Notes: generated from the sequence alone by a model not told the origin. 64,000 nucleotides of DNA from IMGVR_UViG_3300023313_000001:1-64000, one strand, 5' to 3'; numbered from the stretch's first letter, positions 16,315 through 39,171 are shown. Program-made: numbers and translations.

Positions 16315-17684
16315 CAACAAACGAATTCATACGTAAATCTAACCAAAAACATTCACAGCGATACTGTTACTCTGAAACACAATATACCACCAGACAAAAT
16401 AAGATCACAATCATTTGTCCAGATCACGGCAGTTTTAAACAAACAGCATATCAACATCTACGAGGGTCTGGATGTCCAAAATGTGCTAAGGAAAAATTGG
16501 CAAGCCGTAAGCGCTTAACCACAGACGAATTTATCAAACGAGCCAAACAGATGCATGGTAATCGTTATGATTATAGTCAGACCAAGTACACTAATAATCT
16601 AGTGAACGTCGATATCATTTGTCAATCACATGGTGTGTTTTCACAACTACCTAACAATCATCTGAAAGGATCTAATTGTCCAACGTGCTCAAAATTATCA
16701 TCTATATCCAAAAAAACTTATACCACAAAAACATTCACAGACAAAGCTGCATTAATCCACGGTGGTAAATATTGTTATAGTGATGTTAAGTATGTTTCCA
16801 GTTCCACTAAAGTTTCCATTATATGTGAATCTCATGGGGAGTTTACACAACGACCAGCTTCACATTTAGAAGGATCTGGATGTCCTAAATGTGCTGGCAA
16901 TATAATGAATACTACCACCTTTGTGGAAAAAGCTAGGTTAGTGCATGGAGACACATATAATTATTCTACTGTCAACTATGTTAATAATACAACTCCCGTG
17001 AAAATAATGTGTAGTAAGCATCGTTCCTTTACACAACGACCAGCTTCACATTTAGAAGGATCTGGATGTCCTAAATGTGGGCTAGAGATATCAGCCACAT
17101 CCTCATTACTAACTACCAAAGAATATGTTATCAAGGCTATTGCAACCCACAATGCAAAATATGACTACACTTCTGTCAAATACACTGGAACATCCAACCC
17201 AATAACAATCACCTGTCCTGAACATGGTGATTTTGAACAACTCGCATCTAATCATCTTTTAGGACATGGATGTAAAACATGTGCTACTGAAAATCATGTA
17301 GGTTTTTATGATTACAATAGATTGACTACTGATCCTGATTTGATAGATTTGTCTGGTACCTGTTATTTGATGAAATTTACTGGCAGTGGTGAGACTTTTT
17401 ATAAGGTAGGTATTACTACTAGGTTATCCAAACGGTTTTACAAACATGTTACCGGATATGATATTGACAATATTGCTCAAGTCGATACATCACTGCTCAA
17501 TGCGTTTATACTTGAACAAAATATATTATATGTTTACTCTTTACAAAAATACAAACCAATGCACCAGTTCGGTGGACACACGGAGTGTCTAACTTTAACG
17601 AGTGAAGATGTGAATAGTATAATTGCTATATTTGCTGAAACTGTACATGGTGCGTCGCTGATCCCATTATTTGAAACCGGTTGA
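16299..17684 (+). CDS. homing endonuclease-like protein with five DUF723/CapR zinc-binding repeats and a GIY-YIG-like C-terminus
   Basis: Repeats of Y.YS...Y......V.I.C..HG.F.Q....HL.G.GCPKC; C-terminal YLM...FYKVGIT...R..F.GHTE. Confidence 0.75.
   Translation: MSSRLTTNEFIRKSNQKHSQRYCYSETQYTTRQNKITIICPDHGSFKQTAYQHLRGSGCPKCAKEKLASRKRLTTDEFIKRAKQMHGNRYDYSQTKYTNNLVNVDIICQSHGVFSQLPNNHLKGSNCPTCSKLSSISKKTYTTKTFTDKAALIHGGKYCYSDVKYVSSSTKVSIICESHGEFTQRPASHLEGSGCPKCAGNIMNTTTFVEKARLVHGDTYNYSTVNYVNNTTPVKIMCSKHRSFTQRPASHLEGSGCPKCGLEISATSSLLTTKEYVIKAIATHNAKYDYTSVKYTGTSNPITITCPEHGDFEQLASNHLLGHGCKTCATENHVGFYDYNRLTTDPDLIDLSGTCYLMKFTGSGETFYKVGITTRLSKRFYKHVTGYDIDNIAQVDTSLLNAFILEQNILYVYSLQKYKPMHQFGGHTECLTLTSEDVNSIIAIFAETVHGASLIPLFETG
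16842..17079 (+). repeat. identical 52-bp direct repeat (16842-16893 and 17028-17079) inside the endonuclease repeats
   Basis: TTTACACAACGACCAGCTTCACATTTAGAAGGATCTGGATGTCCTAAATGTG occurs twice. Confidence 0.9.
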
Positions 17685-17741: not shown

Positions 17742-18905
17742 ATGCAACCATTATATAGCCAACTACTCAAACTGACACAAGATTCAGAAGCATTTTATTT
17801 CACTGATCACGTATTAGACACCACCACTTATCGTATATTTTTATATCGGTTGGCATCCTATACAGATTTTTGTTTACCTGGTGCACTCGAATGTCGTGGG
17901 ACTATGTTCGAAATGGATGGTGAAGATCCAGTTCGTTTAGCTGCTCGTCCGATGCAGAAATTTTTTAATATCAACGAATGCCCGTTTACCATGGGGGTTA
18001 ATTATTCAGATGGAAATATCGAAAGTGTGATGTTAAAAGAGGATGGAAGTCTCATTAGTACATTTATCCACACTGATGGTGAACTATACTGTAAATCTAA
18101 AGGATCTCTAAGCTCCGACCAAGCACAATGGGCTAATGCGTGGATACGCAAGGAGTCTATGCGGTACGATCAACTTAAAACAGTTACCAATCTGGGTAAT
18201 ACTATAAACTTAGAATATTGTGCACCGTTTAATAGAATTGTGTTAAATTATAATTGTGAAAGTATGATCATTCTTAATGTGCGTCAAATAAGTAGTGGAC
18301 TATACTTACCCAAATCCACGTTTAAGGACACTTGTCCATACATCCCTACCATATGGGTTAACAATATAGAAGATACTGATATTGAGTATGACACGTTGGA
18401 ATCATTAATTGATGATACTCCCAATTTGGAAAACATTGAAGGGTTCGTCGTTCGTTTAAAAAATGGATTGCATTTTAAAGTCAAAACTAATTGGTACTTA
18501 GTTCAACATAGAGCTAAAGATAGTATTGATTCCCCTCGTAGGTTGTTTGAAGCTGCTATTACAGAAGCTACTGATGATTTACGATCGTTGTTTACTGACA
18601 ACCAATTTGTGTTAGATAAAATAACAGAGATGGAAGAGAAAGCTGCTGGAATCTATAATCATATTGTTGAGAGAGTTGAACGATTTGTTAAAACGCATCA
18701 TGATTTAATTGAAAATGATTGTCGTAAGGATTTTGCCATGTTAGGCCAACAGGCGTTTCTAGGAACAGATAAACGATTGTTTGGTTTAGTAATGATGTGT
18801 TATAAACGTGAACGTGGGGATGGTGATGGTCCAGATTATAAACAATTTTGTATCAAAAATTGGAGAGACTGGGGATTAAAAGATGGCCCTGAGGATGATG
18901 AATAA
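17742..18905 (+). CDS. rnlA: RNA ligase 1 (T4 RnlA-like)
   Basis: YRLASYTDF...ALECRG.MFE, PMQKFFN.NE, motif I KEDGSLI, EY.AP.NRIV, EGFV, FKVKT.WY. Confidence 0.92.
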   Translation: MQPLYSQLLKLTQDSEAFYFTDHVLDTTTYRIFLYRLASYTDFCLPGALECRGTMFEMDGEDPVRLAARPMQKFFNINECPFTMGVNYSDGNIESVMLKEDGSLISTFIHTDGELYCKSKGSLSSDQAQWANAWIRKESMRYDQLKTVTNLGNTINLEYCAPFNRIVLNYNCESMIILNVRQISSGLYLPKSTFKDTCPYIPTIWVNNIEDTDIEYDTLESLIDDTPNLENIEGFVVRLKNGLHFKVKTNWYLVQHRAKDSIDSPRRLFEAAITEATDDLRSLFTDNQFVLDKITEMEEKAAGIYNHIVERVERFVKTHHDLIENDCRKDFAMLGQQAFLGTDKRLFGLVMMCYKRERGDGDGPDYKQFCIKNWRDWGLKDGPEDDE

Positions 18906-20288: not shown

Positions 20289-20364
20289 CCTCATAATTAC
20301 ATCCACATAACTACGATCTTTGATAAATAACTCTATACAACAAATATTGATAGAGGACTCTTCA

Positions 20365-21867
20365 ATGGATATTGCTCACCTAAAACGATTATCTGGTCAA
20401 CCTACTTCCCTCAATGAAATGTGGAAAGAAGTAAAGGTTGCTGACCAACAAAAATCAGCTAAGAAATCAGCTAAGAAAGCCAAAGAGAATAATGTAGATA
20501 GTAAAAACAAAGCTGCGAAAGATGTACGAACCACGGACGCTAAAGCAGATATAGCGAATGATGTGTCTGCGGAACTGATAGATGTGGATGATACCTCTAT
20601 TACACCAAAAGATGGAAAAAAAGATGCCGCAGGCCAGAAGACCATAAAAGCTGGTGAACGGTTATTCCACACAGTATCTGTCGGTGATAATGGAGTTCCT
20701 AAGGTTGATGATAGTACTACTATTGACACAGTAGATGTAGAGACATGGGGAGATTATGGCGAAGGATACGTTGTATCATCCACAAATGGTAAAGTATACG
20801 TATCGGAAATGACTAACCAAGCCATAATTGGGTCAGCAAAATTGTCAGATGCGGTCATTTATGAAACTGAGTGTGCTGCAGATATTGTTGCTAAATTATT
20901 CAAACATGCTATTGTACGTAAGGTACAGAAATTGCATCCGTTGATGGAAGCTGCAGATGATTGTGACGATGATTTTGAGTCGTTAAATGAAGCTGTGGAA
21001 ACAACTAGAGAAGATCCTTTAGTTGTTATTTGGGGAGTCCCAAAAAGTACCAAGTATCCTGAACAGGGATTAACTGGACACATGAATTTATCCACAGCAG
21101 CAAAAATATATCGATTCGACACTACTGGAGTTGCGGAAGCTATTAATAATGCAGCCCCTGGGCAACGGATTGAAGTTAAGGGTGAAGAAAAATCTATATG
21201 GCTTGAACCATCTCAACATAACTCCAAGTATTTTGAAGCTTGTGATTTTAGCGTGAGATGTAACCTGACTGAGGGGATGCGTGATGATATTAATGACCGA
21301 CTTCACACTGGGAAGAAAGTTCAGTTGAGTGTGAATTATAATGGGCGTAATATTACTGGACATGTGGTAAGTGTTGGCAAGAGCACTATTCGAATTCGCC
21401 CAACAGAAAAGGCTAAAGCCCGCTTTAAAATCCAAGATGATGAAGTGATCATACCAATTGATGATAGAGCTATTAGATGGTCAGACGATCATCCAGATCG
21501 TATTGTGGGTTTTGCAAAAGATACTCAAGGAGCGTTAGCGAGCACTGATATGCGCGGTACTAGAGCACAGTTCTCCACAGCAAATCCAGGTCAACAGAAG
21601 ACTCCAGCTAAGCAACAAGCTAGTCGTCCAGGTAGAGGAACTAAAGCAAACTTTGGGCAAGGTACTAATAAACAAGGTAAGTTGGATGATCCAGATTCTT
21701 GGGGATTGACTGCTGGATTTAATGGTCCTGATGGTATATCATTAAGTGAATATGCCTTTAGTATAAGAAATAATACCCCATTACGTGAAGGAATTGAAGA
21801 TGATCATGGTGATGATCGTAGTCAGATGGGCCATACATTAGCTGATAATGCATTGGGAGCTAAGTAA
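20365..21867 (+). CDS. putative virion internal/head protein with multiple L-x-E sites
   Basis: TAAATA late motif plus GAGGA RBS; starts MDIAHLKRLSG..SLNE; recurring LME/LNE/LTE/LSE/LRE. Confidence 0.55.
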   Translation: MDIAHLKRLSGQPTSLNEMWKEVKVADQQKSAKKSAKKAKENNVDSKNKAAKDVRTTDAKADIANDVSAELIDVDDTSITPKDGKKDAAGQKTIKAGERLFHTVSVGDNGVPKVDDSTTIDTVDVETWGDYGEGYVVSSTNGKVYVSEMTNQAIIGSAKLSDAVIYETECAADIVAKLFKHAIVRKVQKLHPLMEAADDCDDDFESLNEAVETTREDPLVVIWGVPKSTKYPEQGLTGHMNLSTAAKIYRFDTTGVAEAINNAAPGQRIEVKGEEKSIWLEPSQHNSKYFEACDFSVRCNLTEGMRDDINDRLHTGKKVQLSVNYNGRNITGHVVSVGKSTIRIRPTEKAKARFKIQDDEVIIPIDDRAIRWSDDHPDRIVGFAKDTQGALASTDMRGTRAQFSTANPGQQKTPAKQQASRPGRGTKANFGQGTNKQGKLDDPDSWGLTAGFNGPDGISLSEYAFSIRNNTPLREGIEDDHGDDRSQMGHTLADNALGAK

Positions 21868-22609: not shown

Positions 22610-22873
22610 ATGAAATTGCATGAAATGCAAGACATGAGGACTCACAGTGGACATCGTCAGAGTGATGATGTTAGCTTGTTGAACCAAGCCAATGAATACG
22701 ATCAATACTTTATGCACGATTGTCCTAATAATCACGCGAAGCGAGAATGGAATGACTTTATGGATACTATGTTGGATGATGAGAAGCAATATCTAGCAGA
22801 TTTAGATGATGCAGAATTACTATACATCATCGATAGTGGACAGGACTTAAAAATTGAATATAACTTAACTTAA
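22610..22873 (+). CDS. hypothetical acidic protein (MKLHE start)
   Basis: ORF track. Confidence 0.65.
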   Translation: MKLHEMQDMRTHSGHRQSDDVSLLNQANEYDQYFMHDCPNNHAKREWNDFMDTMLDDEKQYLADLDDAELLYIIDSGQDLKIEYNLT

Positions 22874-22892: not shown

Positions 22893-23261
22893 GTGAATAC
22901 TACGAATACTATCCGGTTAATTAAATACGATTTTGGTACAAGTACCCGTACTAATACTGAGATGCACGTAGATCCAAAATTTATAGATACACTATATCGT
23001 GTACCAACTAGATCTACATCACAAGCTAACACTCAACGAACTGTAATTGATGAGTTATCAGATGGTGGTGCATATGCTTGGGATAGTGGAATGTCTATTG
23101 TAGGTATAGGATATGATGTTAAATACATCATCCAACAAATGTTAGACTTAGCCCAACAAAGTTTGTCGCAAGATGAGATAGATGAGATTAAAGAAGCTTT
23201 CAAGCCAGGATTGTCAGATGACGATAAATCTCAATTACGTAAAGATGCTGGATTAGATTAA
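22893..23261 (+). CDS. hypothetical protein ending in LRKDAGL motif
   Basis: ORF track. Confidence 0.55.
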   Translation: MNTTNTIRLIKYDFGTSTRTNTEMHVDPKFIDTLYRVPTRSTSQANTQRTVIDELSDGGAYAWDSGMSIVGIGYDVKYIIQQMLDLAQQSLSQDEIDEIKEAFKPGLSDDDKSQLRKDAGLD

Positions 23262-23965
23262 TGTTGTTGATCGAAATATCTAAAGACCGGTATGATTTCC
23301 CTGGGTACGAAAATGTTAAAGATAACTGGCAATACCTAATCACTCAGTTCAAAGATCCCGAGAGCAAAACTAAATTTTATATACATAACGCTAAACAGAT
23401 CCACGGCGATAAATATACGTATGACCATACAAAATACGTAGCTGCAGATAAACCAATCACTGTTACCTGTCCCAAACATGGAGATTTCAAAGTCAGAGCT
23501 GTTGCTCACGTATCACCATACCATCGAACTGGGTGCCAAGAGTGTTCTGGTAGGAAGCGACTGTCCACGCAAGAATGGATTGTAAAAGCCGCAAAAAAAC
23601 ATGATAATTTCTATAGTTATGATAAAACCAAATATACAGGCACTTCCAAAAAAGTCACCGTTACTTGCCCCAAACATGGAGATTTTAGCGTGTTCCCCAG
23701 GAACCACATAAAAGGCATTATATGTGCCAAATGTGCTGGACAAGGATTGACCAACGATGAATGGATTGAGCAGTCCAAAGAACGTTATGGCAATCAATTC
23801 ACCTATGAGTTAACTGAGTATACAAAGGGTAATAATCCTATTACGATAACTTGTACTGATCATGGACAAATTAATTTGAAACAAGCAAAAACGCATTTCA
23901 AAAATACCTACGGTGGCTGTAGACAATGTGGTCGTGATGCACGAAAGGCTGCAAACAATACATGA
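23261..23965 (+). CDS. DUF723/CapR zinc-repeat protein without recognisable nuclease domain
   Basis: Three repeats Y.Y..T.Y......VTC..HG.F...C..C. Confidence 0.7.
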   Translation: MLLIEISKDRYDFPGYENVKDNWQYLITQFKDPESKTKFYIHNAKQIHGDKYTYDHTKYVAADKPITVTCPKHGDFKVRAVAHVSPYHRTGCQECSGRKRLSTQEWIVKAAKKHDNFYSYDKTKYTGTSKKVTVTCPKHGDFSVFPRNHIKGIICAKCAGQGLTNDEWIEQSKERYGNQFTYELTEYTKGNNPITITCTDHGQINLKQAKTHFKNTYGGCRQCGRDARKAANNT

Positions 23966-24173
23966 CCTGTACAACAGTACACTAATTATTAAATTTAACT
24001 AAACCAACAAGTTAACAACAATCCGACTTAATTAGTAAATATTATTATTCAAATAGTGTTGCCTTACTAAATACTATTAAGTAAGATGTACTACATCGCA
24101 GCCAATCACATCAGGCAAATAGAGCCAAACTAGTATGCTGCAAACTTAAAACTGATTATTAACAGGAAGAACG

Positions 24174-24323
24174 ATGCAAACCATTATAGCCAACAGACGA
24201 ATTACCAATACGATTACGATCGTAGCGGATACGTTTGCGCGCAATAATGTGGCAACCTTCCAACAGTATCATAATGAACAACGTGATACAAGCGCCTTTC
24301 GAGGAGGTTCAACTGGAATATAA
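24174..24323 (+). CDS. 49-aa attenuator leader peptide upstream of the tRNA array
   Basis: AGGAAG RBS; MQTIIANRRITNTITIVADTFARNNVATFQQYHNEQRDTSAFRGGSTGI*; overlaps the antiterminator strand. Confidence 0.65.
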   Translation: MQTIIANRRITNTITIVADTFARNNVATFQQYHNEQRDTSAFRGGSTGI

Positions 24324-24377
24324 TTAACTTCCATTAGAATCAAACATCGAAAGGCTTCATTATGAAGCCTTTTTTTT
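24294..24377 (+). terminator. attenuator: terminator AAGGCTTCA/TGAAGCCTT plus U8 with mutually exclusive antiterminator
   Basis: GCCTTTCGA (24294-302) pairs with TCGAAAGGC (24347-355), which overlaps the terminator 5' arm. Confidence 0.75.
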
Positions 24378-24389
24378 GGACTATAGAAA

Positions 24390-24512
24390 ATGTTAACTCA
24401 ACAAGAGAAAGAAGAATGGCAAAATGCAGGAATGGATTTTGAACATTTTAGAAAGTACGACAAGAATGGAAAATTAGTAAGTGGGGAAGAACGACATACC
24501 CCAACGAAGTAA
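24390..24512 (+). CDS. small hypothetical protein (40 aa)
   Basis: MLTQQEKEEW...; not in the ORF track because of size. Confidence 0.4.
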   Translation: MLTQQEKEEWQNAGMDFEHFRKYDKNGKLVSGEERHTPTK

Positions 24513-24522
24513 AAAGTATTAT

Positions 24523-24597
24523 GGTGACCTTGGTGTAATGGAAGCACTCAACCTTGTGACGGTTATGGCGAGAGATCGATACTCTCAGGTCACCCCA
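24523..24597 (+). tRNA. tRNA-His(GTG)
   Basis: G-1 plus GTGACCT/AGGTCAC, C discriminator, CCA; loop TT-GTG-AC. Confidence 0.88.
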
Positions 24598-24645
24598 GCT
24601 CTCTAATGGGATAGATACCTCTAATAGACAACTAGAGGATATTAG

Positions 24646-25287
24646 ATGGCTTTTACGAAAGATGATATTACATTAGAATTAGTGCAACGTAGTAATAGTG
24701 TTACAAACTTATTAAGATTAATTGATCAACCAGTTGGAGATTATAGTCGAGTTAAACTCAAAAGAATATTAATCGACAATAATTGGTATGATAGTCTCAA
24801 TACAGATTATTTAGGAAAAACTGGGGTTTGGGGATCTTTAACATACGACGCATTCGCCACGGTGGTTGCACGATGTACCACATGGACGGATGTAGCAAAG
24901 CGATTGAACTTGGGGTGTAGAGGAGCAACATTTAACACTATTAAGAAGTATGTTGCTAAGTATAATATATCCACATCCCATTTTGACGGTAGAGGTAAAC
25001 AAGGCAGGATGCCTTGTACTAGAAAAGAAAATAGTGATTTGTTTGTGGCTGATAGTGGTAGTGCGAATATAACTATCCGAACTAGAATCATACAAGAAGC
25101 GTTGTTACAGTATGTGTGTAGTGAGTGTGGTTTAGATTCCACATGGAACGGCAAAGATTTAACGTTACAATTGGAACATAAAAATGGAATTCCTAACGAT
25201 CATCGGTTAAGTAATTTGTGTTTTATTTGTCCCAATTGTCATACCCAAACTAAAACTTGGGGTAGGAAAAAAAGAGACCACAATTAG
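24646..25287 (+). CDS. HNH homing endonuclease
   Basis: CSECG...WNGK.LTLQLEHKNG..NDHRLSNL.FICPNCHTQT. Confidence 0.88.
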   Translation: MAFTKDDITLELVQRSNSVTNLLRLIDQPVGDYSRVKLKRILIDNNWYDSLNTDYLGKTGVWGSLTYDAFATVVARCTTWTDVAKRLNLGCRGATFNTIKKYVAKYNISTSHFDGRGKQGRMPCTRKENSDLFVADSGSANITIRTRIIQEALLQYVCSECGLDSTWNGKDLTLQLEHKNGIPNDHRLSNLCFICPNCHTQTKTWGRKKRDHN

Positions 25288-25299
25288 AGGAATGAGAAC

Positions 25300-25632
25300 A
25301 TGAAAGCACTTAACGAACTTGGATTTGATGTTGAAGCAGCTCATAAAAAAATTGAGGAACGATGGGATGAATTAGAAACATACTCACACGATCAATTGGT
25401 TTCGGAAGTGAAAGAAATGGAACTTATTGAAGAACAGTGCCAACAACTAATTGATGACACTGAAGATTTTGCAGACGGGTTACCGAATGATAGATCCAAA
25501 ATAATTAAACGCGGTAAAGCATTGTGTGAAATATTAGACGCGATGACGAATAGACAAGGGTTAAATTGGCAATTGTCTATGAATGCAGATCCTGAGATGA
25601 AAGCTCGCTTTCGCACAGGACGAAAAAGTTAA
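25300..25632 (+). CDS. hypothetical protein
   Basis: ORF track, GAGGA RBS. Confidence 0.65.
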   Translation: MKALNELGFDVEAAHKKIEERWDELETYSHDQLVSEVKEMELIEEQCQQLIDDTEDFADGLPNDRSKIIKRGKALCEILDAMTNRQGLNWQLSMNADPEMKARFRTGRKS

Positions 25633-25633
25633 G

Positions 25634-25712
25634 GCCCTTATAATTCAACGGTAGAATGCTTGTTTTGTAATCAAGTTATGGTTTGTGGGTTCGATTCCCC
25701 CTAAGGGCTCCA
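25634..25712 (+). tRNA. tRNA-Thr(TGT)
   Basis: GCCCTTA/TAAGGGC plus T-CCA; loop TT-TGT-AA; slightly irregular variable/T region. Confidence 0.8.
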
Positions 25713-25725
25713 TTATAAATACTGC

Positions 25726-26649
25726 ATGGAATTTAATTATAAACATGCAAAACTTCTAAATGAAGTGGAATTAGAGAAATATGGTGTAGATTTAATACAT
25801 CATCACCACATTAACTTTGGTGAAATATTAACATACACTAAGTGTAAGAAAATATATGGTGTCTCGTTAACGGAACTGTTAAGAAGAGAATTTGGATGGA
25901 GTAAGTTAGTAACAACAGCAGGCTTCAAAAACGGAAACGAACGGAAACGAACGGGAGATTACGTAAACTGCACACAATGTGGACTTACCATATATAAGCG
26001 TAAGTCAGCTCTATGTGGTAATAATTTTTGCTCTCAATCGTGTTCAGCTAGTTATAACAATCGATTTAAGATTAGAAAGCCTTGGACTGAAGAGAGTAAA
26101 CAGAAGTTACGTAATTCGACACTCGAAAGGCGAGAATATAATAGGATAAAGTATACACTTTATCGGAACATGTGTAAGTATTGTGATAAGTTTTTTTGGT
26201 ACAAGAATAGAATTAAATACTGTGGTGATAATTGTAGGAAATATGCGTCATCAGAACAACAGACTCAGTGGTTGAAGGATCATCCTAATCAATTTAAAAA
26301 ATTTAGATTGGGTAGAAAACAGAATCAGATGTCCTATATGGAACGATCGTTTGAGAAGTGGTTGATACAGTTAGGAATAGTTGAAGGATATACTGGATAT
26401 TTGAGAGAAATACATTTCTTCAACAAAACACTACGACGGAATGGATGGATTGATTTTTTATTTCCTAAACATAAGTTAATTATAGAATTGGATGGAACAC
26501 ACCACAAACAACGTGTTCATCAAGATCAAATGAGAGATACATTCTTAATTGGTCGTGGTTGGAATGTTTTAAGAATATCCCACAGAGAGTATGTGAAGAA
26601 TAGTAAAACATCGGAAGTATTAAAATTGTTAGGTCAACGAATGAGTTGA
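25726..26649 (+). CDS. DUF559/Vsr-like homing endonuclease with zinc fingers
   Basis: FCSQSC motifs; IDFLFPKHKLIIELDGTHH...DQMRDTFL..RGW.VLRI. Confidence 0.85.
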   Translation: MEFNYKHAKLLNEVELEKYGVDLIHHHHINFGEILTYTKCKKIYGVSLTELLRREFGWSKLVTTAGFKNGNERKRTGDYVNCTQCGLTIYKRKSALCGNNFCSQSCSASYNNRFKIRKPWTEESKQKLRNSTLERREYNRIKYTLYRNMCKYCDKFFWYKNRIKYCGDNCRKYASSEQQTQWLKDHPNQFKKFRLGRKQNQMSYMERSFEKWLIQLGIVEGYTGYLREIHFFNKTLRRNGWIDFLFPKHKLIIELDGTHHKQRVHQDQMRDTFLIGRGWNVLRISHREYVKNSKTSEVLKLLGQRMS

Positions 26650-26704
26650 CAAATAGCACAATACGTGCGACGCTCTTTAACAATATGAATAAAAATTTGG
26701 TTTT

Positions 26705-26778
26705 ATCAACACGATAGTTCAGTTTGGTTTAGAATAGTCTTGTTACAGAAGTTGGGTTCGATTCCTGACCGAGTTGAT
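26705..26778 (+). ncRNA. tRNA-like element lacking a proper anticodon arm (pseudo-tRNA)
   Basis: TCAAC/GTTGA acceptor, TAGTTCAG..GG..AGAAT D arm, GGG-TTCGATT-CCT T arm; no CCA. Confidence 0.45.
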
Positions 26779-26904
26779 ATTTTTAAAATGATCGGGTATG
26801 AGTCCTCCCTATCTTGAAACATATAATAGGATCTGCAATGCGGAGTATAGGCCCAGCAATAAGAGCAAACACTATATGGAATGAGAGCAGCGTTCAAATA
26901 TTAA

Positions 26905-26981
26905 TGGGGTATGGCGAAGTGGCCTAACGCATGTGGCTTTGATCCACACACTCCCAGGTTCGAATCCTGGTACCCCAGCCA
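26905..26981 (+). tRNA. tRNA-Gln(TTG)
   Basis: TGGGGTA/TACCCCA plus G-CCA; TGTGG-CTTTGAT-CCACA. Confidence 0.92.
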
Positions 26982-26987
26982 AATAAT

Positions 26988-27071
26988 GTGTCAGTTGGGT
27001 AATTGGATGACCCGTGAGGTTGTAGCCCTCATCCGAAAGGCGTGTAGGTTCGAGTCCTACCTGGCACACCA
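26988..27071 (+). tRNA. tRNA-Tyr(GTA)
   Basis: TGAGG-TTGTAGC-CCTCA, variable arm, A-CCA. Confidence 0.88.
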
Positions 27072-27095
27072 AATTATACGTCTACGGATGTGTAT

Positions 27096-27154
27096 AGTAA
27101 GGTATTTTGAGCTCATTACTCAAACTTAGGGTTAATCACCCTACCTTACGACCA
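27096..27154 (+). ncRNA. D-armless tRNA-like RNA with CAT anticodon and CCA end
   Basis: GTAAGG/CCTTAC acceptor, TTTGAG-CTCATTA-CTCAAA, TAGGG-TTAATCA-CCCTA, ACCA. Confidence 0.55.
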
Positions 27155-27160
27155 AATTAT

Positions 27161-27236
27161 GGAACTCTGGCAGTGATGGTTCATGCGCCCGCCTGAAGAG
27201 CGGATTATCTCGGTTCGAAACCGAGGGGTTCCACCA
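27161..27236 (+). tRNA. tRNA-Phe(GAA)
   Basis: GGAACTC/GGGTTCC; CCGC-CTGAAGA-GCGG; ACCA. Confidence 0.9.
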
Positions 27237-27257
27237 AATTAGAAATATGATTTAACA

Positions 27258-27488
27258 ATGGAGACTATTATGATTGATTCGAAACCAGTTAACGAGGTTG
27301 AACCTATGAGCCTAAAAAATTACAAATTTAATGATGATGATTTAAAATATTCACATGAATTTGATGAGTTTGCTGTGTTTGAACATTCAGTTGAAACAAG
27401 TAAACGAAGTGGATTTTATCACGATGAACCTTTTACTTTGACTAAAGATGATGCAATAGCTATTGCAAAACATTTTAAAATAATTTAA
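27258..27488 (+). CDS. hypothetical protein
   Basis: ORF track; ends L.K.DAIAIAKHF. Confidence 0.65.
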   Translation: METIMIDSKPVNEVEPMSLKNYKFNDDDLKYSHEFDEFAVFEHSVETSKRSGFYHDEPFTLTKDDAIAIAKHFKII

Positions 27489-27637
27489 GAAATAGCTGAA
27501 CTATTTGTGACACATGCCCTACCTTTAATTGGGATCAAACACGGATTGTTATGACGATAGTTTGGCGACGTTATTTCCTCTTCGGAGGTTTCCATCTAAA
27601 AAGTACGGAGGTGGACGTAAGAAGTAACCGTTTCAAT

Positions 27638-27713
27638 AGAGCAGTAGGACAATTGGTAGTCTACCTCATTGTCAGTGAGACCGTTGCGGGTTCGATTCCC
27701 GTCTGTTCTGCCA
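27638..27713 (+). tRNA. tRNA-Asp(GTC)
   Basis: AGAGCAG/CTGTTCT, G-CCA; loop TT-GTC-AG. Confidence 0.9.
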
Positions 27714-27719
27714 AATTAC

Positions 27720-27794
27720 ATTCCTATGGAGAAACTGGCATCTCAACACCCTTTCAAGGTGTTATTACGGGTTCAAATCCCGTTAGGAATACCA
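27720..27794 (+). tRNA. tRNA-Glu(TTC)
   Basis: ATTCCTA/TAGGAAT; ACACC-CTTTCAA-GGTGT; ACCA. Confidence 0.88.
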
Positions 27795-27942
27795 AATTGT
27801 GATACAGACACAATATAAAATAAGCGTCTGTTCTCTTTTGTAAGATGTTTTGAGGACGAAAACATTCACTGAAAACTATAATAGATGCCGTGGTCGGTTG
27901 AAGACTTTAAAGAGCTGTATTGAATAGTGAGTAGGGTATACT

Positions 27943-28018
27943 GGACGTGTAGCTCAGTTGGTAGAGCGACAGATTGTTAATCTGTGGGTCCCTGGTTCAA
28001 GTCCAGGCTCGTCCGCCA
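27943..28018 (+). tRNA. tRNA-Asn(GTT)
   Basis: ACAGA-TTGTTAA-TCTGT; canonical D and T arms; GCCA. Confidence 0.92.
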
Positions 28019-28021
28019 AAT

Positions 28022-28747
28022 TTATGTGATCCAGTTATTAATTCTATGAATTAATTGTGTATAAGTAATGGTTGACTGAGATCTGCTAATATTTTCTCGC
28101 CAGGTCACCATTTCAGCATTAGCTGGGTGAGACATTATAGTGGGATCTATGTTTAATTTATATCCGTCACTAATACGGAATAGATGATCCCAAGTTACAC
28201 CATCGGGATTATACTGGCCCTTGTTGGATGGAACATACCAACCATTGGATTTAATTAGATTGAAGTTATACAGTTCTGGATAATCCTTTTGTGAAAATAT
28301 GAATCTGCAAGCTGACCGATATGTAGCTTTAGCATGTTTAGATGTATTACATTGTGGTGAACAATAGTGTTGTCGGCAATGTACTGCTACAAAGTTATTG
28401 GTACAAGTATTACACTCGATTGATTTAGGAAATTTGGGAACAAAGACTTGATCTCGTTTAATCGTTGTTCCTAAATTATCGCGCCACCAATTGATCCGTT
28501 TAATACGAGTTTCAGGTGACGCATTATTATTGGAATGGGTAGCTCCGCAAGACGAATTGCAAAAAGTATTGTTACGTTTTTTGTATGGAATTATGGAATC
28601 GCATAATTTGCATTTTTTGGGATTTGATTCATACGTCAATCGTTGGCGAGCAAATATACCTATAGTTTCGGGATGTTTTGTCGTTTTGTGACGATGGAGA
28701 GATTTAAGAGATTTATAAAATTTATTACAAGTGGGACATTCGATCAT
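28022..28747 (-). CDS. zinc-finger/HNH-like homing endonuclease inserted antisense in the tRNA array
   Basis: C2H2 start, FCNSSC, YCSPQC, DH...I.DG....IDP.IMSHPAN..M..W.EN; TATAAATA late motif upstream on - strand; track start 28948 overlaps tRNA-Ala. Confidence 0.75.
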   Translation of the reverse strand: MIECPTCNKFYKSLKSLHRHKTTKHPETIGIFARQRLTYESNPKKCKLCDSIIPYKKRNNTFCNSSCGATHSNNNASPETRIKRINWWRDNLGTTIKRDQVFVPKFPKSIECNTCTNNFVAVHCRQHYCSPQCNTSKHAKATYRSACRFIFSQKDYPELYNFNLIKSNGWYVPSNKGQYNPDGVTWDHLFRISDGYKLNIDPTIMSHPANAEMVTWRENISRSQSTITYTQLIHRINNWIT

Positions 28748-28815
28748 ATATGTACATTTCCTCAAGTATACTGTATTTATAATCGATTTTCGATAGATCC
28801 ACCAAACCAAATATT

Positions 28816-28894
28816 GGGGCGCGGGACTGCTGGGGGTGGTCATTTGTCTTGCACACAAAAAATCAGCCGAATTCGAATTTCGGGCGCTCCACCA
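28816..28894 (+). tRNA. tRNA-Ala(TGC)
   Basis: GGGGCGC/GCGCTCC with G3:U70; TTTGT-CTTGCAC-ACAAA; ACCA. Confidence 0.85.
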
Positions 28895-29022
28895 AATTAA
28901 TAAGGATAGTAAAATGTCTGATTTAGATGAACAAGATGAATCAACCATGCCAGGTGGAATGATGGATCTTTTTGTAACAACATTAGTTGAAGGTTTAAAG
29001 AAAGTAGTAAAAGATAAACAAT

Positions 29023-29098
29023 AGTAGCAGAGCTCGGCAGGTTGAGCATACCGCTGATAACGGTAAGGTCGTGGGTTCGATCCCCACTGCTACTACCA
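29023..29098 (+). tRNA. tRNA-Ile(GAT)
   Basis: TACCG-CTGATAA-CGGTA; ACCA. Confidence 0.9.
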
Positions 29099-29109
29099 AA
29101 TTATGTCCA

Positions 29110-29184
29110 GGGCCTATGGTGGAATGGATATCACACAAGCCTACGAAGCTTGAGTTCCAGGTTCGAATCCTGGTAGGCCCGCCA
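29110..29184 (+). tRNA. tRNA-Arg(ACG)
   Basis: CAAGC-CTACGAA-GCTTG; GCCA. Confidence 0.9.
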
Positions 29185-29190
29185 AACAAT

Positions 29191-29268
29191 GCCCCTGTAG
29201 TCTAACTGGATAGGCACTTCACTACGAATGAAGACATTATGTAGGTTCGAATCCTATCAGGGGTGCCA
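29191..29268 (+). tRNA. tRNA-Arg(ACG), second non-identical copy
   Basis: CTTCA-CTACGAA-TGAAG; body nearly identical to tRNA-Arg(TCT) at 31086. Confidence 0.9.
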
Positions 29269-29290
29269 AATTAGAGTATGTTGGCGTACA

Positions 29291-29320
29291 ATATCAATAT
29301 CAATATCAATATCAATATCA
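29291..29320 (+). repeat. (ATATCA)5 microsatellite
   Basis: Seen directly in sequence. Confidence 0.85.
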
Positions 29321-29347
29321 TACACCAAAATCATAACGTGAATATAT

Positions 29348-29421
29348 GGCCGGTTAACATAAGGGTAATGTGCTTGTTTTACATGCAGGAAATAATGGTT
29401 CGAGTCCATTACTGGCTACCA
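29348..29421 (+). tRNA. tRNA-Val(TAC)
   Basis: CTTGT-TTTACAT-GCAGG; ACCA. Confidence 0.85.
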
Positions 29422-29438
29422 TATTATAACCAAATTGA

Positions 29439-29525
29439 CGCGAGGTATGCAAGTGGTCAAAGCACTAGGGTTCATATCCCTGGATCGTAAGATTTCACAG
29501 GTTCGAATCCTGTCTCTCGCTTCCA
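29439..29525 (+). tRNA. tRNA(CAT), initiator-like, with long variable arm
   Basis: AGGG-TTCATAT-CCCT (three G:C pairs), C1 mismatch, extra arm ATC-GTAA-GAT, TCCA. Confidence 0.7.
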
Positions 29526-29564
29526 ATCTATAAATACTATTACTTACATGTATATGGAGCACCA

Positions 29565-29846
29565 ATGAACATTCAAGAGATACTACAAGAATCATCAGAC
29601 ATTACCAAACAATTTGAACAGAAATGGGAGAATGCTGAAGAAGAGTTTGACCAAAGTCTTCGCCAAGCAAATATTAATGGGTATGATGGTGGAAGTGACA
29701 GTTATTATGAATTCAAAGAATACAGGAAAGTATTTTTTGATGTTTTATATGCTGGTAAATACACTGCAGATACTATAAAACGACTAGACGGATTGATATC
29801 CAGAGTATATGGATTAATCAATGATATGTCGGAGCATTTACAATAA
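29565..29846 (+). CDS. hypothetical late protein (MNIQEILQE start)
   Basis: TATAAATA upstream, GGAG RBS. Confidence 0.7.
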   Translation: MNIQEILQESSDITKQFEQKWENAEEEFDQSLRQANINGYDGGSDSYYEFKEYRKVFFDVLYAGKYTADTIKRLDGLISRVYGLINDMSEHLQ

Positions 29847-29914
29847 TTTAACTGTTGAACAATATACTAGTTCATGTAAACTAATACCACTATTAATCAA
29901 ATTGGAACTACACA

Positions 29915-30136
29915 ATGTCAAAACGTAAAACAGTAATCAAAACAGATCGTGGTGTTAAAATCTTTAAAGCTCCAGCCAAGTTCAGGGTAGGGAATCGGAA
30001 AAGCGGTCGTTCTGCATTGATAATGACTACTGCAGACTTGTTAAAAGAATTGACATCTGGTAACAATAAACGTGCCCATGATAAAATTAGAACAGTTTTA
30101 AATAAGCGTGGTGTAGATTTTAAGTCAGCTGAGTAA
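29915..30136 (+). CDS. small basic protein
   Basis: Lys/Arg-rich; sigma70-like promoter upstream. Confidence 0.7.
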   Translation: MSKRKTVIKTDRGVKIFKAPAKFRVGNRKSGRSALIMTTADLLKELTSGNNKRAHDKIRTVLNKRGVDFKSAE

Positions 30137-30139
30137 TTT

Positions 30140-30334
30140 ATGTTAAGTCCAGGTGGCAAAATTGAGTACTCTTGTCGAGAATGTAAGAGTACTAATATCT
30201 ACAAAGGTTTTCATCAACTAATGGAAATGAATGTCGCTATGTGTAGAGACTGTAATAGTTGGACACAATGGCATAGTCGCATAAAAACTAGTCTAAAAAC
30301 GAAAAAGAATAAAGCGCGTTTAGTTCAATGTTAG
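30140..30334 (+). CDS. small zinc-ribbon protein
   Basis: CxxC...CxxC. Confidence 0.5.
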   Translation: MLSPGGKIEYSCRECKSTNIYKGFHQLMEMNVAMCRDCNSWTQWHSRIKTSLKTKKNKARLVQC

Positions 30335-30385
30335 AACAGCTCTTCTTCAGGAGAGTGCATTGCGGTTAAATTCCTCCAACCCACA
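30314..30385 (+). pseudogene. degenerate tRNA with TCA-containing loop
   Basis: TAGTTCAATGTTAGAAC D arm, GCTCT/AGAGT stem; degenerate T arm and acceptor, no CCA. Confidence 0.35.
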
Positions 30386-30434
30386 TTCACCGACAATAGC
30401 ATAAATAGAATACCAAACACATAGGAATTTAATC

Positions 30435-30827
30435 ATGCTTACATTAACAGAACAGAACAGAATTAGAAAATTAGCTGGAATGTCATTATTGACTGAGGCA
30501 GCAGGTCAAACGTATCACATACAGAATGAAGCAGACTTGAAAAAGTTGGCATCTAGGTACACTATAATGTATGATGAAGAAGGAGAATCTGTTGTGGTGT
30601 TAACCGATGTTGGACCAGATCTGTCGTCTAATGAATTATATGCCAAGTACGCCAATGATTTGGACCCAGCAGAGTTGGATGTGTTATCTGATTATCCACA
30701 TTTTGCAACATCAGTTACTGAGAAGCCTGGTATGGCTGAGTTCCCATTTGATCCAGAATATCGTACCTGGGCTAGCCATATCAAAATTGAACGACGTATA
30801 GCAAAACACTTACTGTCACAAATGTAA
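30435..30827 (+). CDS. MLTLTEQNRIRKLAGM-leader family protein, copy 1
   Basis: Shared 5' cassette with 34327, 34763 and 35535. Confidence 0.8.
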   Translation: MLTLTEQNRIRKLAGMSLLTEAAGQTYHIQNEADLKKLASRYTIMYDEEGESVVVLTDVGPDLSSNELYAKYANDLDPAELDVLSDYPHFATSVTEKPGMAEFPFDPEYRTWASHIKIERRIAKHLLSQM

Positions 30828-31085
30828 CACAAAGCTCAGGCGAAGGGCTAAAAATCAGCCGATACATAGGAAGTAGAAATTTATAACAATTTCTAGCAAT
30901 ATGCGGATGGCTGATGTAGATTAGGGTAGTCAACAACATTCCATTGCGTGTAACGGGTGTGTACACATTCGAGTCGAACTTCTGGCGTTGTGTGAAAGCA
31001 TCAGATCGAATCTTGACAGATTCTCCTCGCTCTAGTGTTGAGTGGTCTTATAGTGAATTCAGTAATAGACCGTCTTACTTGTAAT

Positions 31086-31162
31086 GCCCCTGTAGTCTAA
31101 TTGGATAGGCAACAGATTTCTACTCTGTTCGTATGTAGGTTCGAATCCTATCAGGGGTGCCA
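31086..31162 (+). tRNA. tRNA-Arg(TCT)
   Basis: ACAGA-TTTCTAC-TCTGT; GCCA. Confidence 0.9.
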
Positions 31163-39039: not shown

Positions 39040-39171
39040 AATATATACCTAAGCACTGGATGATTCGACTGAGTGCACTTTGAGTTTCAAGTCGACGCAA
39101 GTTGGGAGGTCTTGTTCCTTTATCTTCCAAACTTTTTCATTACAATACATAAAACACAAGGAAAATTAATA

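What the first reader, a model, noticed from the sequence alone, without database searches (positions are those of the whole stretch)
24059..24377. Leader-peptide attenuator with a pan-codon leader gating the phage tRNA array
Seen: a sigma70-like promoter (TTGCCT-17-TAAGAT), an RBS, a 49-codon ORF, then a U8 terminator whose 5' arm can instead pair with GCCTTTCGA inside the ORF's last codons. The tRNA cluster starts about 150 nt later. The leader is not rich in one amino acid. It samples synonymous codons widely: all 3 Ile, all 4 Thr, 4 Arg (AGA, CGA, CGC, CGT), 3 Ala, both Phe, both Gln and 2 Val codons, which is unusual for this AT-rich genome. Inference: ribosome stalling from depletion or cleavage of almost any host tRNA would allow the antiterminator to form and turn on phage tRNA supply. 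That would make it a sensor for host anticodon-nuclease defence.
Basis: partly seen in the sequence, partly recalled or inferred. Interest (0 to 1): 0.82.

Follow-up and report, generated by a model that had tools for sequence, protein, structure and literature searches.

The report
Translation-sensing switch before phage tRNA genes
A short translated leader with a terminator/antiterminator switch sits in front of a jumbo phage's tRNA gene array, and the leader uses almost only the amino acids whose tRNAs that array encodes, which suggests the phage makes tRNAs on demand.

Summary
The structural observation holds. Window 24059-24377 contains a promoter, a Shine-Dalgarno sequence, a 49-codon ORF and a strong U8 terminator. 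The terminator's 5' arm can instead pair with GCCUUUCGA (codons 41-43). The two states are nearly equal in energy.

Two relatives were found: a sister phage (93% nt identity) and a second lineage whose leader peptide is 23% identical. Both keep the promoter, an ORF of 49-52 codons, a hairpin over the start region, a small hairpin P1, a three-tier antiterminator with UAA in its apical loop, the terminator and the tRNA array.

The "pan-codon" claim fails: 31 distinct codons against 29.9 +/- 2.7 in phage genes. A sharper pattern replaces it. Codons 1-39 use exactly the 13 amino acids whose tRNAs lie in the array downstream. That run of 41 residues is unique in six frames of the window and longer than any run in 748 kb of other phage DNA. 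The second lineage repeats the rule with its own 12-amino-acid set.

Best reading (about 0.6): a ribosome-mediated attenuator that raises array transcription when decoding of those codons is slow. The anticodon-nuclease link is untested. I found no published precedent. It is a new variant of a known kind.

The parts
24056..24110 (+). Promoter block: -35 TTGCCT 24059-24064, 17-nt spacer, -10 TAAGAT 24082-24087, predicted start near 24095
   Evidence: The 55 nt are identical in the sister phage while the 5' UTR behind them varies. Lineage 2 has TTGACA-17-TAGAGT at the same place and shares the 18-nt motif GTGTTGNCNTACTAAATA. That motif occurs once in the window and once in each relative locus. 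The match to consensus alone is weak, 8 of 12.
24165..24261 (+). Hairpin A: a long imperfect hairpin pairing the Shine-Dalgarno/start region with codons about 26-29
   Evidence: dG -27 kcal/mol, z -4.3. Lineage 2 has an equivalent hairpin of different sequence that pairs the AUG and codons 2-5 with codons 23-27.
24174..24323 (+). Leader ORF: 49 codons plus UAA, with SD AGGAAG at 24164-24169
   Evidence: The ORF is kept as 49, 49, 51 and 52 codons in relatives, with the arm GCC-UUU-CGA always in frame. Chance of such an ORF in lineage 2: 0.013-0.05. Composition is restricted to the array's amino-acid set.
24266..24289 (+). P1 hairpin (GUAUCAU / GUGAUAC), a possible RNA polymerase pause hairpin
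   Evidence: z -3.0. The arms are conserved in lineage 2, where the stem grows to 10 bp with a different loop.
24294..24355 (+). Antiterminator: base helix 24294-24302 with 24347-24355, middle helix 24306-24310 with 24337-24341, apical helix 24314-24318 with 24329-24333; stop codon 24321-24323 in the apical loop
   Evidence: Minimum-energy fold, z -5.7. All relatives fold to the same three-tier shape, with different sequences in the middle and apical helices and UAA in the apical loop.
24350..24377 (+). Intrinsic terminator: stem 24350-24372, loop UUA, U8 tract 24370-24377. It shares 24350-24355 with the antiterminator 3' arm.
   Evidence: dG -13.6 kcal/mol, z -4.9; also found in the terminator census. 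The antiterminator and terminator states differ by only -4.5 to +0.7 kcal/mol in five sequences.
24390..24512 (+). ORF40, the first gene after the terminator; a small protein of unknown function
   Evidence: Against the sister phage pN/pS = 0.07 and pS = 0.41, which marks a real coding gene. Lineage 2 has an unrelated 95-codon ORF in this position.
24524..31162 (+). tRNA array: His, Thr, Gln, Tyr, Phe, Asp, Glu, Asn, Ala, Ile, Arg x3, Val, Met, interspersed with homing-endonuclease-like genes
   Evidence: ARAGORN and Rfam. tRNA-Ala 28816-28894 was checked by hand and has G3:U70.

Best explanation
This is a ribosome-mediated (leader-peptide) transcription attenuator at the head of the phage tRNA array.

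Proposed mechanism:
1. Transcription starts near 24095.
2. The start region of the 49-codon leader is free only while the RNA is nascent. Later it is locked into hairpin A, so mainly the first, polymerase-coupled ribosome counts.
3. If that ribosome keeps pace with the polymerase, it reaches the last codons and the UAA in the apical loop. It then occupies or melts the 5' half of the antiterminator, including GCCUUUCGA (codons 41-43). The 3' arm is left free to form the terminator, and transcription stops at the U8 tract.
4. If the ribosome lags anywhere in codons 2 to about 36, GCCUUUCGA pairs with UCGAAAGGC as soon as the latter emerges. The terminator cannot form, and polymerase reads into ORF40 and the tRNA genes.

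The sensing codons specify only the amino acids whose tRNAs the array encodes. The switch would therefore report shortage of exactly the tRNA species the phage can replace, giving negative feedback on tRNA supply.

Shown here: the sequence elements, the two alternative folds and their near-equal energies, their conservation, and the composition rule.
Inferred: that the leader is translated, the direction of regulation, and the physiological trigger (host tRNA depletion through defence nucleases, host shut-off or codon-demand mismatch).
For: Anatomy: all elements are present, and the antiterminator is the minimum-energy fold. The two states are near-isoenergetic in five sequences.

Conservation against a diverged background (sister phage):
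- Flanking genes share 68-78% nt identity, and one upstream protein 34% amino-acid identity. The leader block is 88-93% identical.
- Synonymous divergence of the leader is 0.118, against 0.414 for ORF40 and 0.371 for the 110-codon gene next to it (Fisher P = 0.007). This shows constraint at the RNA level.

Second lineage (L050, L060-L064), with a leader peptide 23% identical:
- It keeps the promoter motif, an ORF of 51-52 codons in frame with the arm, hairpin A, P1, the 9-nt 5' arm at the same distance (47 against 44 nt), the terminator and a tRNA array.
- The middle and apical helices differ in sequence but still pair. In L063 the stop moved by one codon, the apical helix was replaced, and UAA is again in the loop.

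Composition, lineage 1:
- Codons 1-39 use exactly the 13 amino acids of the array.
- This run of 41 in-set residues is the only run of 30 or more in six frames of the window.
- None of 13,317 windows of real genes exceeds 35 of 38 in-set.
- None of 104,035 open position-preserving shuffles reaches the observed value.
- The longest run in 748 kb of other phage DNA is 30.

Composition, lineage 2:
- The apparent Asp mismatch was resolved when two tRNA-Asp genes missed by default ARAGORN were found.
- 47 of 50 codons are then in its 12-amino-acid set, with a run of 36 against a maximum of 30 elsewhere.

Differences between lineages go the right way: Ile (tRNA present, 6 codons, against absent, 0 codons), Lys (absent from the main array, 0 codons, against present, 2 codons) and Thr (8 against 2 codons).

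The tRNA array is the only common cargo behind the terminator.
Against: - There is no experimental evidence of translation or of regulated termination.
- There are only two independent lineages, so the match between leader composition and array content rests on few evolutionary events.
- Leader 2 fits lineage 1's amino-acid set about as well as its own (37 of 40 for both).
- Lineage 2 was found by searching for the terminator sequence, so the terminator's invariance there is by construction.
- The base helix is invariant and therefore gives no covariation.
- Exceptions to the composition rule: Ser40 in the window; Thr2, Ser3 and Thr40 in lineage 2.
- At codon level, ACC, GCC and GUC need expanded wobble by the phage's U34 tRNAs.
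- Hairpin A sequesters the SD and AUG at equilibrium, and the SD is weak in lineage 2.
- The leader's codon usage resembles that of out-of-frame ORFs.
- No anti-antiterminator exists, so the predicted default is read-through, unlike the trp attenuator.
- The other 165 kb of the genome was not checked for further tRNA genes.
- The host is unknown.
Confidence: 0.6

Rival explanations
1. A conserved cis-regulatory RNA switch that does not sense translation. A phage or host protein, an uncharged tRNA or another ligand would choose between antiterminator and terminator. Alternatively the roughly 280-nt transcript is a stand-alone structured small RNA, and the ORF is incidental.
For: The RNA is very structured (z -4.55 and -5.9). 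The SD and AUG are paired in hairpin A in both lineages. Synonymous sites are constrained and pN/pS is 0.45. Codon usage is atypical. The promoter spacer motif is conserved beyond what sigma-70 recognition needs, which could mark an operator.
Against: An incidental ORF should not survive 77% peptide divergence with the frame, the length and the stop-in-loop position intact. Restriction of the reading frame to the array's amino acids has no meaning for an untranslated RNA, yet it is extreme in two lineages. No Rfam family, including T-box, matches.
Confidence: 0.2
2. An ordinary small protein gene followed by a leaky end-of-gene terminator. The alternative pairing is fortuitous or serves mRNA stability.
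For: The ORF with an SD is conserved. A short C-terminal motif (Q-Y-H ... D-T-x-A-F-R) is shared by both lineages.
Against: Peptide identity between lineages is only 23%, and predicted character differs: Ile/Thr/Asn-rich against Ala/Gln/Glu-rich. No other homologues were found in a word-indexed search of 5.8 billion protein clusters or an exhaustive phmmer scan of 1.84 billion representatives. The shared motif is identical at every synonymous position, including the rare GCC (chance about 0.002 from the codon usage), and it coincides with P1 and the antiterminator arm, so RNA constraint explains it. Synonymous divergence is depressed 3.5-fold relative to neighbouring genes. ORF40, 12 nt after the U tract, and the first tRNA have no promoter-like site of their own in the scan, so they need read-through.
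Confidence: 0.1
3. The long hairpin is an RNase III or other processing site, or a stabiliser, at the 5' end of the tRNA precursor. It is not a switch.
For: It is a three-tier imperfect hairpin of 18-20 bp lying ahead of tRNA precursors that must be processed.
Against: This does not explain the exact overlap with a near-isoenergetic terminator, the conserved ORF with its stop in the loop, or the composition rule.
Confidence: 0.05

Closest known systems
Multi-amino-acid leader-peptide attenuators of enterobacterial operons (thrL: Thr and Ile; ilvL: Ile, Val, Leu)
   Same: A promoter-proximal short ORF, an intrinsic terminator, an overlapping antiterminator whose 5' strand lies in or at the end of the ORF, and regulatory codons for more than one amino acid. 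Read-through follows when the ribosome lags.
   Different: The cargo is tRNA genes, not biosynthetic enzymes. There are 12-13 regulatory amino acids spread over the whole leader rather than runs of one to three. No 1:2 anti-antiterminator exists, so the predicted default without translation is read-through. The stop codon sits in the apical loop of the antiterminator. No match to Rfam leader models.
pheST leader (pheM) attenuator
   Same: Leader-peptide attenuation that controls a component of the translation apparatus according to the supply of charged tRNA.
   Different: That leader senses one amino acid (Phe) and controls a synthetase. Here many tRNA species are sensed and the tRNAs themselves are the product.
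T-box riboswitches
   Same: Terminator/antiterminator choice that responds to tRNA status.
   Different: T-boxes bind uncharged tRNA directly through a specifier codon and the T-box motif, with no translation involved. No T-box match was found here, and a conserved ORF is present instead.
tRNA regions of phages T5 and T4
   Same: Arrays of tRNA genes interspersed with small ORFs, homing endonucleases and stable RNAs. The T4 Rnl1-type RNA ligase is known from tRNA repair.
   Different: The T5 record annotates many internal promoters and terminators in and around its tRNA region but no attenuator. T5 and Vibrio phage pv27 carry tRNAs for nearly all or all 20 amino acids, so the composition test has no power there.

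Membership tests
Ribosome-mediated (leader-peptide) transcription attenuators | Short ORF with a start codon and SD directly downstream of a promoter | tested here: met
   AGGAAG-4 nt-ATG, 49 codons, about 80 nt after the predicted start. The promoter position is conserved in both lineages.
Ribosome-mediated (leader-peptide) transcription attenuators | Intrinsic terminator between the leader ORF and the regulated genes | tested here: met
   Stem plus U8 at 24350-24377, dG -13.6 kcal/mol, z -4.9. The same element is present in all relatives.
Ribosome-mediated (leader-peptide) transcription attenuators | Antiterminator mutually exclusive with the terminator, with its 5' strand placed where a translating ribosome can mask it | tested here: met
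   24294-24302 (codons 41-43) pairs with 24347-24355, which overlaps terminator positions 24350-24355. The two states differ by -4.5 to +0.7 kcal/mol.
Ribosome-mediated (leader-peptide) transcription attenuators | Regulatory codons cognate to what the operon supplies | tested here: met
   The leader is restricted to the amino acids of the array's tRNAs in two lineages, with empirical P below 1e-4 and binomial P of 1e-5 to 1e-7. The form is new: many amino acids, and tRNAs as the product.
Ribosome-mediated (leader-peptide) transcription attenuators | Upstream 1:2 pause or anti-antiterminator hairpin that makes termination the default without translation | tested here: inconclusive
   The conserved P1 hairpin (24266-24289) could be a pause hairpin, but it does not pair with the antiterminator arm. 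The predicted default is read-through.
Ribosome-mediated (leader-peptide) transcription attenuators | Leader is translated, and termination responds to charged-tRNA supply | not testable with these tools
   The phages are uncultured, and no expression data are available here.
Rfam leader families and T-box (RF00230 and amino-acid leader models) | Match to the family covariance model | tested here: not met
   There is no hit at 24059-24377, either at E up to 1 or at gathering thresholds.
Ordinary small protein-coding gene | Purifying selection on the protein, with freely diverging synonymous sites and detectable homologues | tested here: not met
   pS 0.118 against 0.37-0.41 in neighbouring genes, and pN/pS 0.45. 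Identity between lineages is 23%. There are no other homologues.
Stand-alone small RNA | Own promoter and terminator, conserved structure, no conserved reading frame | tested here: not met
   Promoter, terminator and structure are present. However, a reading frame is conserved and its composition is constrained.

The most novel reading that the evidence does not exclude
A tRNA-supply homeostat. This would be the first case in which leader-peptide attenuation controls tRNA genes. The leader's amino-acid repertoire would evolve to mirror the repertoire of the phage's own array, so the phage boosts tRNA synthesis only when those host tRNAs are depleted, for instance by anticodon nucleases or host shut-off.
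Probability: 0.5. Interest if true: 0.9.

Novelty: new variant of a known kind. Interest (0 to 1): 0.8.

Why it matters
Phage tRNA genes are currently discussed as codon-usage helpers and as counter-measures to host tRNA-cleaving defences. How their expression is controlled is largely unknown. A leader that reads out decoding speed at exactly the codon families the phage can serve would show that tRNA supply is regulated on demand. It would extend classical attenuation from amino-acid biosynthesis to tRNA genes.

It also gives a simple, testable rule, leader composition equals array repertoire, that can be searched for in other phages whose arrays cover only part of the amino acids. Finally, it would be a compact natural sensor of tRNA depletion for use as a reporter of anticodon-nuclease activity in laboratory strains.

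Tried and rejected
- **GenBank phages (INPHARED).** No DNA or protein match to the leader. No cultured relatives through the flanking proteins.
- **IMG/VR.** Only the window's own contig (IMGVR_UViG_3300023313_000001) encodes the leader, the 515-residue protein (20320-21867) or the 110-residue protein (25300-25632). The DUF723 gene gave 43 loci, but it is a mobile endonuclease-type gene and the hits are not syntenic.
- **Pattern hits judged to be chance.** The inverted-arm pattern gave 7 unrelated loci. The promoter motif gave 21 unrelated loci, and none of the seven most promoter-like of them that I scanned has tRNAs. L051 is GC-rich and unrelated.
- **Metagenome protein-pattern scan with ORF40.** Nothing found.
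- **The 'pan-codon' reading.** Rejected on statistics.
- **A long outer helix in the window's minimum-energy fold.** 24269-24278 pairs with the terminator loop, but this is not conserved in L046 or in lineage 2, so it was dropped.
- **Column-wise covariation counting.** Not attempted. MAFFT does not place the inner helices of the two lineages in common columns. Per-sequence folds and shuffles were used instead.
- **Homology between the 110-residue protein and lineage 2's 95-residue protein.** Not supported (E = 1.3).
- **Generality test in T5 and Vibrio phage pv27.** Uninformative, because their arrays cover nearly all or all 20 amino acids.
- **Literature.** Four full-text searches found no report of an attenuator on a phage tRNA array.

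Full report
**What is in the window.** The window is the first 64 kb of a 229.5-kb uncultured jumbo-phage contig, IMGVR_UViG_3300023313_000001.
- TTGCCT (24059-24064), 17 nt, TAAGAT (24082-24087).
- AGGAAG (24164-24169), 4 nt before the ATG.
- A 49-codon ORF (24174-24323, stop UAA).
- A hairpin at 24350-24372 running into a U8 tract (24370-24377).

ARAGORN places tRNA-His at 24524. An array follows to 31162: His, Thr, Gln, Tyr, Phe, Asp, Glu, Asn, Ala, Ile, Arg x3, Val and Met, interspersed with homing-endonuclease-like genes.

**Are the elements more than chance?**
- The promoter matches 8 of 12 consensus positions, below the scan's threshold. The scan listed neither the promoter nor the terminator.
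- Folded alone, the terminator has dG -13.6 kcal/mol and z -4.9. My own census finds about seven comparably strong + strand terminators in 64 kb.
- GCCUUUCGA (24294-24302, codons 41-43) is the perfect complement of UCGAAAGGC (24347-24355). The latter shares six bases with the terminator's 5' strand.
- This pairing is the minimum-energy structure: z -2.7 for 24280-24380, z -5.7 for 24290-24360, and z -4.55 for the whole predicted 286-nt RNA.
- Rfam has no match here, either at E up to 1 or at gathering thresholds.

**Relatives.**
- GenBank phages gave nothing, and IMG/VR holds only the contig itself.
- The large protein collection gave one homologue of the leader peptide, P0002 (90% identity). 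An exhaustive phmmer scan of 1.84 billion representatives added only a spurious repeat protein.
- P0002 lies on three contigs of a sister phage, L046-L048, with the same order: Rnl1-type RNA ligase, small genes, leader, 39-codon ORF, tRNA array.
- A scan of metagenome contigs for the terminator sequence found L050. Its leader peptide cluster (P0005-P0008) led to L060-L064, including an 80-kb contig.
- This second lineage has the same neighbourhood: Rnl1, small genes, leader, a 95-codon ORF, tRNA array.
- Lineage 2 was found through its terminator, so the identity of that element there proves nothing. Everything else about it is independent evidence.

**Conservation pattern.** Against the sister phage:
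- Ordinary genes share 68-78% nucleotide identity, and many do not align at all.
- The protein just upstream of the sister phage's leader (L046 6257-6523; window counterpart 22610-22873) is 34% identical.
- The leader block is 88-93% identical, with 55 consecutive identical bases over the promoter (24056-24110) and a much more variable 5' UTR.

Nei-Gojobori counts:

| Gene | pS | pN/pS |
|---|---|---|
| Leader ORF | 0.118 | 0.45 |
| ORF40 | 0.414 | 0.07 |
| 110-codon gene | 0.371 | 0.36 |
| Rnl1 | 0.685 | 0.34 |

The leader's synonymous sites are significantly less diverged than those of its two neighbours (Fisher P = 0.007). The leader is therefore constrained as nucleic acid, and only weakly as protein.

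**The second lineage.** Its leader peptide is 23% identical to the window's, yet the following are kept:
- A promoter at the same place, now TTGACA-17-TAGAGT. It shares the 18-nt motif GTGTTGNCNTACTAAATA, which is unique to the leader in the window and in every relative locus.
- An ORF of 51-52 codons in frame with GCC-UUU-CGA. The chance of such an ORF in shuffled sequence is 0.013-0.05.
- A long hairpin that pairs the start region with codons about 23-29, built from a different sequence.
- The small hairpin P1 (GUAUCAU / AUGAUAC) just upstream of the arm.
- The 9-nt 5' arm, which was not part of the search pattern, 47 nt before its partner against 44 nt in the window.
- Between the arms, a two-tier hairpin of different sequence. 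The window has GGUUC/GAAUC plus UGGAA/UUCCA. L060 has AGAUG/CAUCU plus GAGU/ACUC. L063 has AGAUGA/UCAUCU plus a GGG/CCC helix.

In all four distinct sequences the UAA stop lies in the apical loop. In L063 the stop has moved by one codon and the apical helix has been replaced around it. With either the antiterminator or the terminator enforced, the two states differ by only -4.5 to +0.7 kcal/mol in five sequences. That is what a kinetic switch needs.

**The 'pan-codon' claim.**
- 31 distinct codons against 29.9 +/- 2.7 in 49-codon windows of this phage's genes.
- 16 extra synonymous codons against 13.0 +/- 2.3.
- P = 0.09 given the peptide.

Synonymous codon choice is somewhat atypical (P = 0.02-0.04) and resembles that of out-of-frame ORFs.

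**What the leader composition does show, lineage 1.** Codons 1-39 use 13 amino acids: Met, Gln, Thr, Ile, Ala, Asn, Arg, Val, Asp, Phe, Tyr, His and Glu. These are exactly the 13 whose tRNA genes form the array downstream. The first residue outside the set is Ser40, and the others (Gly, Gly, Ser, Gly) lie after the arm. In the sister phage all 43 codons up to and including the arm are in the set, and all five amino-acid replacements between the two phages are to in-set residues.

The 13 amino acids make up 66.6% of codons in the phage's genes. Against that background:
- The run of 41 in-set residues is the only run of 30 or more in all six frames of the window.
- None of 13,317 38-residue windows of real genes exceeds 35 in-set.
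- None of 18,335 open mononucleotide shuffles, and none of 104,035 open codon-position-preserving shuffles, reaches the observed value.
- The longest run in 748 kb of unrelated phage loci is 30.
- Adding Lys and Cys, whose tRNA genes lie elsewhere in the window, does not change the result.
- ORF40 next door has 13 out-of-set residues in 40.

**Replication in lineage 2.**
- Default ARAGORN gave an array of Ala, His, Lys, Glu, Asn, Phe, Gln, Tyr, Met, Arg and Val. This left three Asp residues of the leader unexplained.
- Rfam then showed two more tRNAs, and relaxed ARAGORN calls both tRNA-Asp(GUC).
- With this 12-amino-acid set, 47 of 50 leader codons are in-set. The exceptions are Thr2, Ser3 and Thr40, and Thr40 is encoded by the P1 3' arm.
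- The run of 36 is the longest in the 20-kb locus (the next is below 18). It exceeds anything in the window or the 748 kb of other loci, where the maximum is 30.
- Every amino acid of each lineage's set occurs in its own leader.
- Differences between the lineages go the right way for three amino acids. For Ile, lineage 1 has the tRNA and six codons, and lineage 2 has neither. For Lys, lineage 1's main array lacks the tRNA and its leader has no Lys codons, while lineage 2 has the tRNA as third gene and two codons. Thr falls from eight codons to two where the tRNA is absent.
- This specificity is only partial. Leader 2 fits lineage 1's set as well as its own (37 of 40 for both).

**Mechanism proposed.** The elements fit a ribosome-mediated attenuator with this logic:
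1. The antiterminator's 5' strand is made long before its partner. Left alone, the RNA therefore takes the antiterminator fold, and polymerase reads through into ORF40 and the tRNA genes.
2. A ribosome that keeps pace with polymerase reaches codons 37-49 and the UAA in the apical loop at the moment the 3' arm emerges.
3. That ribosome masks or melts the 5' half of the hairpin, the 3' arm pairs downstream, and the terminator fires.
4. A ribosome delayed anywhere in codons 2 to about 36 leaves the arm free.
5. Hairpin A would close the start region once it is fully transcribed, so that mainly the polymerase-coupled ribosome is counted.
6. P1, followed about 10 nt later by a U-rich stretch, is a candidate pause hairpin for synchronisation.

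The sensing codons belong only to amino acids whose tRNAs the array makes, so the output (phage tRNAs) relieves the signal (slow decoding). That is negative feedback.

The sequence elements, folds, energies, conservation and composition are shown. Translation, the direction of the effect and the trigger are inferred. Unlike the trp attenuator, there is no anti-antiterminator, so absence of translation should give read-through rather than super-attenuation.

**Context and the defence idea.** A T4 Rnl1-type RNA ligase (17742-18905) lies 2-5 kb upstream of the leader in both lineages. The window also encodes a Ro60/TROVE-vWA protein, GTP cyclohydrolase I, a permuted tmRNA and a CUA-anticodon tRNA. 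This is a phage heavily invested in RNA repair and translation, which is consistent with conflict over tRNAs. Nothing here tests the anticodon-nuclease link. Host shut-off or codon-demand mismatch would serve equally well as triggers.

**Rivals.**
- A translation-independent switch or a stand-alone small RNA (about 0.2) explains the strong structure, the paired start region and the constrained synonymous sites. It does not explain a frame that survives 77% peptide divergence and whose composition is so constrained.
- An ordinary small protein gene with a leaky terminator (about 0.1) is contradicted by the divergence pattern, the lack of homologues, and the fact that the only shared peptide motif coincides with RNA elements and is identical at all synonymous positions.
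- A processing site (about 0.05) does not explain the terminator overlap.

**Comparison with known systems.**
- The closest mechanisms are the multi-amino-acid attenuators thrL and ilvL and the pheST leader. T-boxes share the tRNA-sensing purpose but not the mechanism, and no T-box match exists.
- The T5 record annotates many promoters and terminators in and around its tRNA region but no attenuator.
- T5 and Vibrio phage pv27 encode tRNAs for nearly all or all amino acids, so the composition test has no power there.
- Four full-text literature searches found no report of leader-peptide attenuation of tRNA genes in phages. Absence from that library is not proof of absence.
- I class this as a new variant of a known kind.

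**Caveats.**
- There are two independent lineages only.
- Lineage 2 was ascertained through the terminator.
- The base helix is invariant, so it offers no covariation.
- There are a few out-of-set residues.
- C-ending codons in four-codon boxes need expanded wobble by the phage's U34 tRNAs.
- The SD is weak in lineage 2.
- The host is unknown, and 165 kb of the genome was not examined.

Noticed in passing
window 640-717 (terminator at 575-598 just upstream): A tRNA with anticodon CUA, called 'tRNA-Pyl' by ARAGORN and scoring 60.7 bits as tRNA in Rfam. It looks like an amber suppressor, which hints at stop-codon read-through or recoding somewhere in this phage.
   Followed up: no
window 30314-30385: A tRNA-like sequence (Rfam 27.2 bits, just below threshold) with an 8-nt anticodon loop, UCUUCAGG. 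It may be a degenerate or unusual (suppressor or frameshift-type) tRNA.
   Followed up: partly
window 26623-26788 (L046 7723-7890): An intergenic block 93% identical to the sister phage, as conserved as the leader. It contains two small hairpins and a tRNA-like element (26708-26776, Rfam 21 bits) with a poor anticodon stem. Function unknown.
   Followed up: partly
window 50655-50980: A permuted (two-piece, alphaproteobacterial-type) tmRNA with tag ANDNFFATAIAA, next to tRNA-Cys. It is a possible hint to the host group.
   Followed up: no
window 17742-18905; L046 1246-2448; L060 2627-3832: A T4 Rnl1-type RNA ligase (PF09511 plus PF20819) is kept 2-5 kb upstream of the leader and array in both lineages. 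This suggests a tRNA-repair and tRNA-supply module.
   Followed up: partly
window 23261-23965, 24646-25287, 25726-26649, 16299-17684: Homing-endonuclease-like genes (DUF723, DUF723/T5orf172, an HNH-like ORF, DUF559) riddle the region. The DUF723 gene sits immediately upstream of the leader's promoter and is absent from the sister phage. The 213-codon ORF after tRNA-His replaces a tRNA-Tyr present in the sister phage.
   Followed up: partly
window 24390-24512: ORF40, a 40-residue protein under strong purifying selection (pN/pS 0.07), is the first gene after the terminator. It has no homologues beyond the sister phage. Lineage 2 carries an unrelated 95-residue ORF there.
   Followed up: partly
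L050 3480-3515 (minus strand); also in L060-L063: Lineage 2 has a second, tandem copy of the promoter motif (TTGCCATACTAAATA...) about 90 nt upstream of the first.
   Followed up: no
window 28816-28894; L064 7303-7378 and 7663-7739: tRNA callers disagree on unusual phage tRNAs. The window's tRNA-Ala (G3:U70, odd D arm) is missed by Rfam. Two tRNA-Asp genes of lineage 2 are missed by default ARAGORN.
   Followed up: yes
window 41841-43388 and 39073-39864: A Ro60/TROVE-vWA protein and a GTP cyclohydrolase I. Together with the tmRNA and RNA ligase, this is an unusually rich set of RNA quality-control and modification genes.
   Followed up: no
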